Shown: positions 17,581 to 46,762 of the stretch, piece after piece
Layout of the letters: each line of letters opens with the position of its first letter
Numbering within the stretch: position 1 is the stretch's first letter
Origin: Orbicella franksi
Taxonomy: Eukaryota
Assembly: GCA_964199315.1 (NCBI GenBank)
Contig: OZ116698.1
Span: forward strand, 24,056,001-24,120,000
Length of the DNA stretch: 64,000 nucleotides
Reading direction: 5' to 3'
The notes under the pieces: generated by a model
The model's input: only the letters and a program-made list of their open reading frames with translations
What the model was told of the DNA's origin: nothing
The model's database searches: none
Position numbers and translations under genes: made by a program

Positions 17581-17962
17581 ATGACAAAAATAACGACCAT
17601 TTTTGCCTTGCTATGCATTTTCATGCTCTTTGCTGAAACATGCGCTTTCTGGTCAAGAAGAAGAAGACGACGACGTAGATCCCCACCACCACCACCAGGG
17701 CTTCCACCACCCTGTACACCCCAAGATTGCGTACTCAGCACATGGTCATCCTGGAGCAGCTGTTCTTATCCTTGCGGAAATAGTGGTATTATTTCGAGAA
17801 CGCGATACAAAATTAGCGTAGAGAACTCTTGCGGACGTTGTTATCCGTTACGCGATGAAAATCCGTGTAATAGAGATAAATGCAATGGAACAAGCAGTAC
17901 TGGTTCACATAGTACAGGGTGTTATTGTAGAGCGGGATATACTGGAACTTGTTGCCGAAGCG
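17581..17962 (+). CDS. Giant gene exon 1: signal peptide, R8/P-rich segment, TSP1, EGF-like
   Basis: [22 protein letters not shown]; [12 protein letters not shown]...SRTR; [12 protein letters not shown]; GTAAG donor, phase 1. Confidence 0.9.
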
Positions 17963-45000: not shown

Positions 45001-46762
45001 GGCCGGTTTGGCACTTAGTAGAAGCCACCTTTCTGAGCGACTGTAAACAGCGTCATGTAACAGTCACGGTAAGTCTACCACCTGTACGTCTCTTTTAAGT
45101 GCGAGTGGTTTTCCAGTTATAATTAAATTTCAACCTGCAACCTGCAACCTGCACCCTGCAAAAAAGACCTGCCGAAGTTATACATGTACTTTCGTGATTT
45201 TATTCATCGTTCTCCACTCACGCAATTCTTAGCAAACAATACTACAGTATCAGCGGACGTGTGAAGGGATCGTGAAGAGATTCTTTCCGTGTCAAAAGCA
45301 CGGAGACCAAACTTGAAAACACAGTATTCAGAGGGGTTTGAAATCTCGAGGTATTCAGTTGGTTCGTACTATGTATTATGTAGTGTGCTATTTCGTAACC
45401 TTTAAGGATGCAGTACCTAAAGTGGTTAATACATTTTGGAAAGGCACAGAAAACGTTGTCAAAATGTTGAAGGGGTCATTAATTTTAACATCTGTAAATT
45501 TAACGTCACTTTTTCCAATGAACAATTGTTTGATTTGTTTTGGGATTTTTTTTGTCTGCCTCTTTTACCAATTGCGTAATGAAACGGTTTCGATTAAACT
45601 AAGTTTCACACGTTCTTGTCCTGACAGGTCGCGGCTGGTTCAAGACTTTGGATTGGCCCGACAGACTTACTGCATTCCTCGTGGAAGTCACAAGACCTCG
45701 AAAGCGGGATATCCAAAACAGAATTTTGCGTTGGAACTTTGCCTGTCGGATGCCAGATTAAATCCATGAGCGAAATACTCCCAAACGCAACGGACGTGAA
45801 ATGTAGTGACTGCCGTTTGAGTCATTATGGGACGTATTACCTTAGTATAAGAGTAACAAATGGTGCTGGCCTTTTTACAGTGATCGCGACAAACGGGACC
45901 AAAGTCGATCTGACGGCTCCTTTCCTCGGTGATGTTGTTCCGCAGTTCACCGTCACGTCATGCATCACCAATTGTACCCTGGCTTCAAATATCACAGGCG
46001 TCCAGGATCATGAAAGCGGTGTCGGTGTGTGCAGCTATGCCATAAGAAACAGTACTGACTTTGTTACCGACTTTGTAGATAATGGCTTGAGCACGACTGT
46101 GGAGGCCTCAGGACTACAGTTGCTGCCTGGACAAAGCTATTACACCGTGGTGAGATGCAAAAACAATGTTGGGCTCAGCACGGAGAGCGTGTCTTCTCCA
46201 GTCATTGTTGACAATACACCACCTTCGAAGGTACATTCAATCATTTGGACACTGTTTAAACACTTTACGTAACTGAATCTAGAAAGGAAGAGAATTCATC
46301 ACTTTTGTACCCTTATAGAACCCACCACTGTGAAGCTCGCATCCTCTCATCCCTTCACTTTCTCTTGTCATTTTTTAGGGCTCGGTAATTGTGAGTGAAG
46401 ACCGTACGCATGACGTCTTTGGCATACATTCCAGCTGCCACCTCTTCAACAAAACCCTAAGGGCTCACTGGCATGGTTTTCACGACGAAGAATCCGAGAT
46501 AAGCGGCTTTCGTGTTGCAGTTGGAAAACAACCGAACGTAACCGACGTCTTGCTCTTCCAAGAAGTTGGCTTGGTGACAAACGTTAGTCTGTCTTTCACC
46601 AACATCAGCACGTTGTTTGATGGTGACATCGTTTACGTGACAGTTGAATCACGCAACGGCGTAGGCTTGGTCACTCAAAGTTCGTCACCTCCTACAAGGT
46701 TGATTGCAGCTGACAGTGAGGAGTATATGAGAGAAGGAGATTTTTACTGTCTGAATTTTTAA
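17581..46762 (+). CDS. Giant secreted multidomain protein, about 2752 aa: SP, Arg8/Pro, TSP1, EGF, cbEGF, Cys-rich repeats, disintegrin-like motif, about 20 FN3-like repeats
   Basis: join(17581..17962,29232..29416,32560..32808,34623..34871,35955..36174,36862..37024,37745..37900,38498..44165,45628..46230,46379..46762) = 8259 nt. All junctions are GT-AG with matching phases, there is one open frame, and the stop is TAA 46760-46762. Confidence 0.85.
18241..18453. mobile_element. MITE with TAGACTGCAAAAC terminal inverted repeat
   Basis: TAGACTGCAAAACAGTCGT...ACGAGTGTTTTGCCGTCTA; a related longer copy lies at ~21411-22495. Confidence 0.7.
18896..20125. mobile_element. Non-autonomous TIR element with subterminal (CGAATAG)n / (CTATTCG)n arrays
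   Basis: TIR GGGGTGTCTGGAAAACC / GGTTTTCCAGACACCCC; heptamer arrays in inverted orientation at each end; possible 7-bp TSD ATTTTGT/ATTTCGT. Confidence 0.75.
20265..20435. repeat. Palindromic (hairpin) interspersed repeat
   Basis: ATGCGTCTGTCCTCTTATTGA...CATTGTCAAAGT - loop - ACTTTGACAATG...TCAATAAGAGGACAGATGCAT; second copy at ~51310-51515. Confidence 0.7.
21226..23747 (-). mobile_element. Non-autonomous Helentron (Helitron2/HINE-type), copy A, with an internal MITE
   Basis: Same termini and interior as 57228-59145; inserted in an A-run (T-run on the minus strand) with no TSD; terminal hairpin at 23720-23747. Confidence 0.75.
21411..22495. mobile_element. Longer member of the TAGACTGCAAAAC MITE family with an internal ~105-bp tandem duplication
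   Basis: 21411-21630 and ~22390-22495 align with the two halves of 18241-18453. Confidence 0.55.
24248..24321 (-). pseudogene. tRNA-Gly(GCC)-like sequence (pseudo-tRNA or SINE head)
   Basis: A box TGGCGCAGTGG, anticodon loop CTTGCCAT, B box GGTTCGATT; acceptor and T stems do not pair. Confidence 0.5.
24322..25149. mobile_element. MITE with long TIRs and 9-bp TSD (MULE-like)
   Basis: TIR GGGTTGGTACATTTCG(G/C)TGACCCCTAGTCC with CCATGGACTAC subrepeats; TSD ACGGCAACC at 24313-24321 and 25150-25158. Confidence 0.85.
27270..27425. mobile_element. Degenerate AATAGGCCATTTCCGAGTT-family MITE
   Basis: Similar to 47070-47239; right TIR decayed. Confidence 0.5.
28187..28640. mobile_element. Interspersed repeat (MITE-like) with CCCTATTTATGACC subrepeats
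   Basis: A reverse-complement copy lies at ~52174-52593; G/C-run termini. Confidence 0.65.
29232..29416 (+). CDS. Giant gene exon 2: calcium-binding EGF and start of Cys-rich repeat
   Basis: (D)[26 protein letters not shown]...NPWNRCQ; TTCTAG acceptor, GTATG donor. Confidence 0.9.
30130..31064. mobile_element. Non-autonomous TIR element (TTAA-flanked on the left, Kolobok-like) hosting a SINE
   Basis: TTAA-GGTCACTCCAAAAA ... TTTTTGGAGTGATC; subterminal TTTCAGCCTCT(A)AAGTGC inverted copies; right TSD degenerate. Confidence 0.55.
30157..30451. mobile_element. tRNA-derived SINE in head-to-head palindromic form
   Basis: 30161-30402 is a near-perfect inverted repeat, each arm with B box GGTTCGAATCC; 11-bp TSD CGTATATTTTT at 30145-30155 and 30452-30462. 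Confidence 0.8.
32560..32808 (+). CDS. Giant gene exon 3: Cys-rich repeat (249 nt, phase 0-0)
   Basis: [37 protein letters not shown]...PGYPCQ; AG/GT boundaries. Confidence 0.85.
32886..33405. repeat. Interspersed repeat with terminal palindrome and degenerate GAAGATT-type minisatellite
   Basis: Internal inverted repeat at ~32895-33035, followed by CCGAAGATTT-like low-complexity units. Confidence 0.5.
34623..34871 (+). CDS. Giant gene exon 4: Cys-rich repeat (249 nt, phase 0-0)
   Basis: [37 protein letters not shown]...PGNPCQ; paralogous to exon 3. Confidence 0.85.
35955..36174 (+). CDS. Giant gene exon 5: Cys-rich repeat
   Basis: [43 protein letters not shown]...; AG/GT boundaries, phase 0-1. 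Confidence 0.85.
36272..36314 (-). ncRNA. Minimal hammerhead ribozyme, intact core
   Basis: Minus strand GACT-CTGAAGA-T-GAC...GTC-GAAA-C-GTC-AGTC. Confidence 0.75.
36583..36625 (+). ncRNA. Minimal hammerhead ribozyme with mutated core
   Basis: GACT-CTGAAGA-T-GAC...GTC-AAAG-C-GTC-AGTC; the invariant GAAA is changed to AAAG. Confidence 0.6.
36862..37024 (+). CDS. Giant gene exon 6: Cys-rich repeat
   Basis: [19 protein letters not shown]...[24 protein letters not shown]; phase 1-2. Confidence 0.85.
37745..37900 (+). CDS. Giant gene exon 7: Cys-rich segment with disintegrin-like motif
   Basis: CSGVGYSC...[16 protein letters not shown] continuing into exon 8 CNGILGTCP, which resembles the ADAM disintegrin motif GTxCR...CDLPExCxG...CP; phase 2-2. 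Confidence 0.8.
38498..44165 (+). CDS. Giant gene exon 8 (5668 nt): tandem FN3-like repeats
   Basis: Uninterrupted ORF with recurring D-x-T/S-PP-x-x-G-x-V-x-DG...D-x-DYQ...W-x-x-F-x-D-x-ESGI-x-x-Y-x-W-x-IGT...Y-x-V-x-V-x-A-x-N-x-AGL units; donor GTAAA after GAG at 44165. Confidence 0.92.
44358..45174. mobile_element. Non-autonomous TIR element with 9-bp TSD (MULE-like) carrying a GPCR fragment
   Basis: TIR CGGCAGGTCTTTTTTGCAGGGTGCAGGTTGCAGGTTG / reverse complement; TSD AAGTTATAC at 44349-44357 and 45175-45183. Confidence 0.85.
44505..44636 (+). pseudogene. Captured class A GPCR TM1-TM2 fragment
   Basis: [44 protein letters not shown]: GN (N1.50), ICL1 RLRT, N-x-F...L-x-x-SD (D2.50). Confidence 0.8.
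45628..46230 (+). CDS. Giant gene exon 9: FN3-like repeats
   Basis: [10 protein letters not shown]...[15 protein letters not shown]...DHESGVG...VDNTPPSK; phase 0-0. Confidence 0.88.
46379..46762 (+). CDS. Giant gene exon 10: last FN3-like repeat and stop
   Basis: [12 protein letters not shown]...[19 protein letters not shown]...DFYCLNF*; no hydrophobic TM segment. Confidence 0.88.
   Translation, partial: GSVIVSEDRTHDVFGIHSSCHLFNKTLRAHWHGFHDEESEISGFRVAVGKQPNVTDVLLFQEVGLVTNVSLSFTNISTLFDGDIVYVTVESRNGVGLVTQSSSPPTRLIAADSEEYMREGDFYCLNF

What the first reader, a model, noticed from the sequence alone, without database searches (positions are those of the whole stretch)
17581..46762. About 2750-aa secreted protein with an unfamiliar architecture: TSP1/EGF head, Cys-rich repeats, disintegrin-like motif and about 20 FN3-like repeats
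Seen: ten GT-AG exons join in one frame (8259 nt), with a signal peptide and no TM or GPI-like tail. About 20 units of 110-125 aa share a D-x-T-PP-x-x-G-x-V-x-DG...D-x-DYQ...ESGI signature, an Asp-rich pattern that could bind Ca2+. Established: TSP1, cbEGF and disintegrin modules mediate adhesion. Inference: an extended extracellular rod (matrix, mucus, skeletal organic matrix or microbe-binding) that I cannot assign to any named family. This is the strongest candidate for an undescribed system in the window.
Basis: partly seen in the sequence, partly recalled or inferred. Interest (0 to 1): 0.75.

Follow-up and report, generated by a model that had tools for sequence, protein, structure and literature searches.

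The report
Giant secreted coral rod protein gene
This is a real, expressed coral gene for a 2752-residue secreted protein with a cysteine-rich head and a chain of 20 fibronectin-type modules; it is conserved across corals, sea anemones and soft corals, but nobody has studied or named the family.

Summary
Ten GT-AG exons (17581-46762, + strand) join into an 8259-nt frame of 2752 aa. RNA contigs from three runs show five of the nine junctions exactly, and one contig spans exons 5-8, so the head and the giant exon 8 (5668 nt; it encodes FN3-01 to -17 and the start of -18) belong to one transcript.

The protein is 98% identical over its full length to Orbicella faveolata RefSeq 'uncharacterized protein LOC110066684'. 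It is colinear with orthologues in Stylophora, Montipora, Nematostella and octocorals.

Architecture:
- signal peptide, then a conserved W-Arg7-8-Pro-rich N-terminus
- TSP1, an EGF-like piece and a cbEGF-like module
- four ~83-aa Cys-rich repeats ending in a disintegrin-like knot
- 20 FN3 domains, the same number in every full-length anthozoan orthologue checked
- a conserved Cys-containing tail

New here: the Cys-rich repeats have no Pfam match. Their nearest relatives are repeats in giant Myxococcota proteins and, by fold, Dictyostelium ecmA/ecmB. The FN3 subtype (D-x-E-S-G-I signature) also occurs in sponges, amphioxus and many bacterial giant surface proteins. Four such genes and three larger FN3 genes cluster within about 400 kb.

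Most likely it is an extracellular glycosylated rod for matrix or adhesion. Calcium binding, location and partners are untested. It is a new variant of a known kind (modular matrix protein), of moderate interest.

The parts
17581..17962 (+). Exon 1: signal peptide (aa 1-23), conserved W-Arg8-Ser-Pro5 stretch, TSP1 domain (aa ~50-101), EGF-like half module
   Evidence: Pfam TSP_1 25.5 bits against a 21.6 cut-off. The N-terminal pattern is conserved in hexacoral and octocoral orthologues. Colinear with P0027, P0066 and P0136.
29232..29416 (+). Exon 2: calcium-binding-EGF-like module, then the start of Cys-rich repeat 1
   Evidence: EGF_CA 23.7 bits, below the 27 cut-off, with a D-V-D-E-C...G-S-Y-x-C motif. 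tblastn shows 61-66% identity to orthologues.
32560..32808 (+). Exon 3 (249 nt, phase 0-0): Cys-rich repeat of about 83 aa
   Evidence: No Pfam hit. Aligns with Myxococcota repeats in A2. RNA joint 32808/34623.
34623..34871 (+). Exon 4 (249 nt, phase 0-0): second Cys-rich repeat of about 83 aa
   Evidence: RNA joints 32808/34623 and 34871/35955.
35955..36174 (+). Exon 5: third Cys-rich repeat
   Evidence: RNA joints 34871/35955 and 36174/36862.
36862..37024 (+). Exon 6: first half of the fourth Cys-rich repeat
   Evidence: RNA joints 36174/36862 and 37024/37745.
37745..37900 (+). Exon 7: disintegrin-like end of the Cys-rich stalk (..C-R-x-A-x-D-x-C-D-x-P-E-x-C..)
   Evidence: Pfam Disintegrin E 0.0056, 17.9 bits, below the 35.1 cut-off. 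RNA joints 37024/37745 and 37900/38498.
38498..44165 (+). Exon 8 (5668 nt): FN3-01 to FN3-17 and the first residues of FN3-18
   Evidence: Open frame of 1954 codons. Repeat alignment A1. The A1 profile hits titin, contactin and fibronectin FN3 domains in the PDB. AlphaFold2 model pLDDT 96.5, and Foldseek finds FN3 folds.
45628..46230 (+). Exon 9: rest of FN3-18 and FN3-19
   Evidence: tblastn 56-83% identity to orthologues. Included in A1. Junctions agree with RefSeq model P0136.
46379..46762 (+). Exon 10: specialised FN3-20 (invariant T-H-D...H..C-H), conserved tail P-P-T-R-L...E-G-D-F-x-C-L-N-F, and the stop codon
   Evidence: Alignment A3 has 29 invariant columns across 11 anthozoan sequences. 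Model check.

Best explanation
The locus encodes a secreted, heavily N-glycosylated extracellular rod of about 300 kDa. It belongs to an unnamed family found in every anthozoan group sampled (stony corals, sea anemones, soft corals).

Head (about 550 aa). It combines a strongly basic W-Arg8-Pro5 tip, a TSP1 module, EGF-type modules and a stiff disulfide-laced stalk. The stalk has four ~83-aa Cys-rich repeats and ends in a disintegrin-like knot. I infer that this end docks onto matrix or cell-surface ligands.

Rod. Twenty FN3 domains are joined by short Pro-rich linkers (V-D-x-T-P-P) with no flexible spacers. At 3.5-4 nm per FN3 (textbook value) they would form an extender of about 70-80 nm. 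The domain number and the identity of each position have been kept since hexacorals and octocorals split. That suggests a fixed-length spacer or multi-site scaffold rather than an elastic, freely expanding array.

Far end. The divergent last domain, with a conserved His/Asp/Cys cluster and a Cys-bearing tail, is the likely second binding end.

Linkers. The conserved acidic residues (D108/D1, D12, D19, D38, E40) lie in the linker, the A-strand extension and the B-C loop. These are expected to meet at each domain junction and may bind calcium to stiffen the rod.

Shown: the gene structure, transcription, the domain folds, conservation and the lack of a membrane anchor. Inferred: extracellular matrix or adhesion role, rod geometry, docking ends and calcium binding.
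For: - One transcript: five spliced joints in RNA contigs, and one contig spanning exons 5-8. Twelve RNA runs hold at least 83% of exon 8's sampled words.
- Full-length colinear orthologues: 98% Orbicella, 66-67% Stylophora and Montipora, 51% Nematostella.
- Exactly 20 repeats in each full-length anthozoan orthologue checked. Each repeat is closer to its positional counterpart in other species (25-83%) than to its neighbours (about 30%).
- FN3 fold: profile against the PDB gives titin E 6.5e-23, contactin and fibronectin about 3e-8. Model pLDDT 96.5. Foldseek hits are FN3 domains (neogenin, titin, Eph receptor and others).
- Head: model pLDDT 87.3, almost entirely beta-hairpins, pTM 0.44 as expected for an elongated shape.
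- Only one hydrophobic stretch, at the N-terminus. 37 N-glycosylation sequons, pI 5.6.
- Conserved Cys residues in the FN3 array come in pairs within domains.
- The same FN3 subtype builds long arrays in bacterial giant surface proteins with varied heads: invasin-like, PQQ propeller, peptidases. That is consistent with an extender role.
Against: - No protein-level, localisation or cell-type data were found for any family member.
- Signal peptide cleavage is judged from sequence pattern only.
- The disintegrin and cbEGF assignments fall below Pfam cut-offs.
- No RGD or KGD motif is present.
- Junctions 1/2, 2/3, 8/9 and 9/10 rest on homology to gene models, not on reads laid here.
Confidence: 0.65

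Rival explanations
1. It is a secreted recognition or binding factor for microbes or foreign surfaces in mucus or on epithelia. The gene cluster would supply diversified paralogues.
For: - Four head-bearing paralogues and three larger FN3 genes lie within about 400 kb. Several family members, by their gene numbers, also lie near one another on one Oculina chromosome.
- TSP1 modules and a poly-Arg tip could bind polyanionic microbial surfaces (inference).
- The FN3 subtype and the Cys-rich repeats are also used in bacterial surface proteins.
Against: - Paralogues are old (72-75% identity, similar to the between-genus orthologue distance).
- Repeat number is fixed, and the head is the most conserved part (53-83%). 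This is not the pattern of fast-diversifying recognition genes.
- No expression or binding data exist.
Confidence: 0.15
2. It is a component of the coral skeletal organic matrix or of the cell-to-skeleton attachment.
For: It is an acidic (pI 5.6), Asp-rich, secreted protein in a reef-building coral. TSP1-bearing proteins are known in coral skeleton proteomes (general knowledge, not tested here).
Against: Full-length orthologues with the same 20 repeats exist in the non-calcifying anemones Nematostella and Actinostola, and family members occur in the soft corals Dendronephthya and Xenia. No skeleton proteome paper lists any accession tried.
Confidence: 0.06
3. It is a structural protein of stinging capsules (cnidocysts), secreted into the capsule vesicle.
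For: Many cnidarian-specific Cys-rich extracellular-type proteins end up in cnidocysts (PMC12549020, discussion read).
Against: No hydrozoan, scyphozoan or cubozoan homologue with this head appeared in any search, although cnidocysts are shared by all cnidarians. There is no minicollagen-type Cys-rich domain and no propeptide before a dibasic site.
Confidence: 0.05
4. The model is an artefact: two neighbouring genes (head exons 1-7 and FN3 exons 8-10) were wrongly joined.
For: There are long introns (11.3 kb after exon 1), and the module styles of the two halves are very different.
Against: The RNA joint 37900/38498 is seen in three runs, and one contig spans exons 5-8. The same fused architecture occurs in at least 12 anthozoan proteins, including RefSeq models.
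Confidence: 0.02

Closest known systems
Orbicella faveolata uncharacterized protein LOC110066684 isoform X1 (XP_020629580.1), with orthologues Stylophora LOC111337481, Montipora XP_068693723, Nematostella LOC116619209 and LOC5508728, Dendronephthya LOC114522435
   Same: Same gene or family. 98% identity over 2752/2747 aa for Orbicella, 51-67% for the others. Same order of modules, and the 20 FN3 domains and C-terminal tail in those checked.
   Different: Nothing of substance. All are unnamed predictions without any functional study.
Tenascin / fibronectin-type matrix glycoproteins (Cys-rich or EGF head plus a tandem FN3 rod)
   Same: Secreted and glycosylated, with a Cys-rich or EGF-type N-terminal part followed by a long uninterrupted FN3 array. 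The FN3 fold is confirmed.
   Different: - No FN1 or FN2 modules, fibrinogen globe or RGD were found.
- The FN3 domains belong to a separate subtype with a D-x-E-S-G-I loop and an extended A strand.
- 17 of them sit in one exon rather than one or two exons per domain.
Dictyostelium ecmA/ecmB and psi proteins (Dicty_CTDC repeats, PF00526)
   Same: Best reviewed-protein fold matches of the head: ecmB E 9.5e-9, ecmA 3.3e-8, probability 1.0. They share the C-x-D-x-x-x-C-T-x-x-D-x-C core. A cnidarian fragment is auto-named 'Extracellular matrix A-like'.
   Different: Pfam PF00526 does not hit the coral exons even at E 1. The coral unit is about 83 aa, not 24 aa, and there are only four units.
Giant Cys-rich secreted proteins of Myxococcota/Polyangiales (e.g. 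MET0388882.1, HOU52541.1 'putative metal-binding motif-containing protein')
   Same: 30-37% identity across four consecutive repeats with the same period, Cys spacing and W-T-N / C-T-x-x-D-x-C / G-x-C-x-G-T motifs. There are 34 invariant columns in A2.
   Different: These are bacterial, with tens of repeats, other partner domains (MopE motif, RCC1) and no TSP1, EGF or FN3 context.
Bacterial giant surface proteins with arrays of the same FN3 subtype (Armatimonadota PQQ-propeller proteins, Elusimicrobia C1A-peptidase proteins, an invasin-like protein P0082)
   Same: Same domain signature W-x-x-F-x-D-x-E-S-G-I ... Y-Y-V-x-V-x-A-x-N-x-A-G-L ... S-D-G-V-x-V-D-x-T-x-P. About 30% identity over 84-100% of the array.
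   Different: Different heads. In a tree of 179 domains the animal and bacterial domains separate almost cleanly: 5 label changes against 59 in shuffles.
ADAM / ADAMTS proteins (disintegrin-like plus TSP1 modules)
   Same: A TSP1 module and a disintegrin-like Cys knot with a C-D-x-P-E-x-C ending. There are weak fold hits to ADAM10 and ADAM17.
   Different: No metalloprotease domain. The disintegrin score is well below the Pfam cut-off, and the module order differs.

Membership tests
Fibronectin type III domain (PF00041) | Sequence profile match and a seven-strand beta-sandwich fold | tested here: met
   Pfam whole-protein score 54.7 against 25. The A1 profile against the PDB gives titin 6.5e-23, contactin-1 3.3e-8 and fibronectin 3.6e-8. 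AlphaFold2 pLDDT 96.5, and the 21 Foldseek hits at E <= 0.001 are FN3 domains.
Thrombospondin type 1 repeat (PF00090) | Profile match above the curated cut-off, with W-x-x-W and C-S-x-x-C-G motifs | tested here: met
   25.5 bits against 21.6, at aa 53-101 of exon 1. W-S-S-W-S-S-C-S...C-G is present.
Calcium-binding EGF (PF07645) | Profile match above the cut-off, with the D-x-D-E-C ... aromatic consensus | tested here: inconclusive
   23.7 bits against 27 on exon 2. The motif D-V-D-E-C...N-T-V-G-S-Y-T-C is present.
Disintegrin (PF00200) | Full-domain profile match above the cut-off | tested here: not met
   17.9 bits (window) and 20 bits (Stylophora) against 35.1. Only profile positions 25-63 of 75 match on the window exon. 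'Disintegrin-like' is a resemblance only.
Dicty_CTDC repeat (PF00526) | Profile match to the 24-aa Cys repeat | tested here: inconclusive
   No hit on coral exons 3-6 at E up to 1. Their Myxococcota homologues do carry PF00526, and the head's best reviewed fold matches are ecmB and ecmA.
Versican / lectican (the name attached to the Stylophora orthologue PFX19966.1) | N-terminal Ig plus Link modules; C-terminal EGF, C-type lectin and CCP modules | tested here: not met
   Pfam scans found none of these modules in the Stylophora head (P0027:1-470) or in any window exon. The name is a mis-transfer.
Tenascin | EGF array, FN3 array and a C-terminal fibrinogen globe | tested here: not met
   No fibrinogen_C hit. 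The C-terminus is FN3-20 plus a 24-aa tail.
ADAM / ADAMTS | Reprolysin metalloprotease domain before the disintegrin-like and TSP1 modules | tested here: not met
   No peptidase family appears in any Pfam scan of the exons or orthologue heads.
Unnamed anthozoan TSP1 / Cys-rich stalk / 20-FN3 family | Colinear full-length similarity, the same module order, 20 FN3 domains, the W-poly-Arg N-terminus and the E-G-D-F-x-C tail | tested here: met

The most novel reading that the evidence does not exclude
The family may be an anthozoan invention that fused two parts. One is a Cys-rich stalk of a type otherwise seen only in Myxococcota and social amoebae, possibly gained by ancient gene transfer. The other is an ancient intron-poor array of 20 bacterial-style FN3 domains. 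Together they would make a calcium-stiffened molecular ruler of fixed length (about 100 nm) that sets a defined spacing in anthozoan tissues, for example between epithelium and mesoglea, substrate or surface mucus.
Probability: 0.12. Interest if true: 0.7.

Novelty: new variant of a known kind. Interest (0 to 1): 0.45.

Why it matters
Cnidarian matrix biology is used to reconstruct how animal tissues first held together, yet this large, deeply conserved and expressed family has no name or study.

Three features make it a useful test case:
- The domain count has stayed at 20, with position-by-position conservation, since hexacorals and octocorals diverged.
- The Cys-rich stalk's closest relatives are in myxobacteria and slime moulds rather than in other animals.
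- The FN3 subtype is shared with sponges, amphioxus and bacterial surface proteins, which bears on the old question of how FN3 domains moved between animals and bacteria.

In practical terms, the Stylophora orthologue is mislabelled 'Versican core protein' and should not be read as evidence for lecticans in corals.

Tried and rejected
- Direct sequence search of exon 8 against PDB chains found nothing. Only the repeat profile worked.
- Foldseek of the head against the PDB gave no convincing match.
- Seven full-text searches covered accessions and locus names of coral, anemone, octocoral, sponge and amphioxus homologues, and the terms matrisome, calicoblast and Dicty_CTDC. No paper mentions this family.
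- Supplements of the Stylophora cell atlas and the Nematostella matrisome paper could not be linked to the family. They use other gene identifiers.
- Homodimer test of FN3-20 plus tail with complex prediction gave no verdict, so it counts neither for nor against. I dropped the idea that the tail Cys makes a disulfide dimer. FN3-20 has exactly two invariant Cys residues (one in the domain, one in the tail), which fits an internal bond.
- Recent bacterial origin of the FN3 array is unlikely, because animal and bacterial domains separate in the domain tree.
- The calcium-site geometry could not be examined, because model coordinates are not returned.
- Earlier scan notes gave no information on this gene.

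
Full report
**Gene model.** The + strand between 17.5 and 46.8 kb holds a 1954-codon open frame (38376-44237) flanked by shorter open pieces. tblastn with full-length homologues from Oculina, Stylophora, Montipora and Nematostella placed ten colinear blocks. Choosing GT-AG sites that keep the frame gave these exons: 17581-17962, 29232-29416, 32560-32808, 34623-34871, 35955-36174, 36862-37024, 37745-37900, 38498-44165, 45628-46230 and 46379-46762.

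**Transcription.** Twelve RNA runs hold at least 83% of the sampled words of exon 8. I laid four runs on 32700-38699. Assembled RNA contigs from three runs showed GT..AG joints at 32808/34623, 34871/35955, 36174/36862, 37024/37745 and 37900/38498. One 1426-nt contig ran through exons 5, 6, 7 and 8. The remaining four junctions agree without gaps with the RefSeq model of Orbicella faveolata LOC110066684 isoform X1, which is 98% identical over 2752/2747 residues. The window is thus an Orbicella-type stony coral, and the gene is already annotated, but only as 'uncharacterized protein'.

**The FN3 array.** An alignment of the units (A1) and an HMM built from it find 20 units of 101-122 aa. The first unit is divergent.
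Frequencies in 100 repeats from five species are listed.
- The A1 profile matches FN3 domains of titin, contactin and fibronectin in the PDB.
- An AlphaFold2 model of one unit has pLDDT 96.5, and Foldseek returns FN3 domains.
- The units differ from textbook FN3 by a longer stretch between strands A and B (D-G...D-x-D-Y-Q) and a D-x-E-S-G-I loop between strands B and C.
- Stylophora, Montipora, two Nematostella sequences and a further (unnamed) full-length sequence, P0071, all have exactly 20 units.
- Each unit is much closer to its positional counterpart in other species than to its neighbours. The array was fixed before hexacorals and octocorals parted.
- Conserved Cys residues in the array occur as pairs within domains.

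**The head.**
- Exon 1 gives a signal peptide followed by W-Arg8-Ser-Pro5. This pattern is conserved in every anthozoan orthologue looked at.
- Next comes a TSP1 module that passes Pfam's cut-off.
- Exon 2 is cbEGF-like but below the cut-off.
- Exons 3-6 encode four repeats of about 83 aa with no Pfam match.
- An exhaustive search with this region found 1454 proteins at E <= 0.001. Apart from cnidarian sequences, the hits that could be identified are giant proteins of Myxococcota/Polyangiales (a few from other bacterial phyla), many carrying Dicty_CTDC or MopE motifs.
- The alignment runs through four consecutive repeats with the same period and Cys spacing, and has 34 invariant columns.
- Among proteins of 1510-4807 aa, no other animal has this head.
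- The head model (pLDDT 87.3) is a chain of beta-hairpins. It has no good PDB match.
- Its best reviewed matches are Dictyostelium ecmB, ecmA and psi proteins. Its best AlphaFold-cluster matches are bacterial 'disintegrin' and DUF4215 proteins.
Formal Pfam membership in Disintegrin is not met.

**Where the FN3 subtype occurs.** The same signature appears in three groups:
- homoscleromorph and calcareous sponges and amphioxus;
- three larger neighbouring coral genes with open frames of about 4050 aa;
- hundreds of bacterial giant surface proteins with varied heads. One sits on a clearly bacterial contig and one has invasin-type C-terminal domains. There are 760 hits at E <= 1e-20.

In a FastTree of 179 domains, the animal-versus-bacterial label needs only 5 changes against about 59 in shuffles. 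Animal domains are therefore close to one group, which argues against a recent transfer.

**Genomic setting.** The head occurs in only four genes of this genome, all on the same chromosome within about 400 kb, alongside the three larger FN3 genes.

**Interpretation.** There is a signal peptide and no other hydrophobic segment. The protein has 37 N-glycosylation sequons and pI 5.6. It has short Pro-rich linkers and two rod-like module types. Together these point to a secreted, glycosylated rod for matrix or adhesion, with a docking head and a specialised last domain. That last domain has an invariant T-H-D...H..C-H cluster and a tail Cys. Calcium binding at the domain junctions is plausible from where the conserved acidic residues lie, but it is untested. 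A skeleton-specific role is unlikely, because anemones and soft corals keep the protein. I found no study of any family member.

**Verdict.** This is a real, well-conserved but unnamed modular extracellular protein. It is a new variant of a known kind, of moderate interest.

Noticed in passing
Own genome G000:C1:23.70-24.10 Mb (window = C1:24056001-24120000); loci L002-L010: A gene cluster spans about 400 kb. Four genes carry the Cys-rich head plus an FN3 array: this one, two with ~1890-aa exons at 75% and 72% identity, and one apparently shorter. Three further genes have single open frames of 4037-4063 aa built from the same FN3 subtype (about 30-35% identity).
   Followed up: partly
window 17650-17712 (aa 24-44 of exon 1): The predicted mature N-terminus is W followed by 7-8 Arg and then a Pro run. 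It is conserved in hexacorals and octocorals. I know of no described motif like it; polyanion binding is a guess.
   Followed up: partly
window 46379-46759 (FN3-20 and tail): The last FN3 lacks the usual acidic signature. Instead it has invariant T-H-D, H, C-H residues and a tail ending E-G-D-F-x-C-(L/V/F/I)-(N/G)-(F/V/I). This could be a metal site and an internal disulfide.
   Followed up: partly
window 36100-36700 (intron 5): Summed RNA contig depth is 2,800-10,000 here, against 10-100 on the exons. There are many loose ends and opposite-strand joints. It looks like a highly abundant, transcribed repeat or transposon.
   Followed up: no
window 765-1397 (+): A 210-aa ORF has a Phospholip_A2_4 match (PF08398, the parvovirus VP1-type PLA2 domain; 27 bits against 23.9). 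It may be a virus-derived or transposon-borne piece.
   Followed up: no
window 59933-60991 (-) and 63244-63861 (-): Two rhodopsin-family GPCR open frames (7tm_1, E 2.6e-35 and 2.8e-15) lie downstream of the gene on the opposite strand.
   Followed up: no
P0027 (Stylophora PFX19966.1): This orthologue is named 'Versican core protein' in GenBank and UniProt, although it has no Link, Ig or C-type lectin modules. It also lacks one 83-aa repeat compared with isoform X1, which suggests skipping of a phase-0 repeat exon.
   Followed up: partly
window 29416/32560, 32808/34623, 34871/35955: The first three introns of the Cys-rich stalk sit at the same point of each repeat, in phase 0 right after the conserved C-Q. 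By contrast, 17 FN3 domains share one exon.
   Followed up: partly
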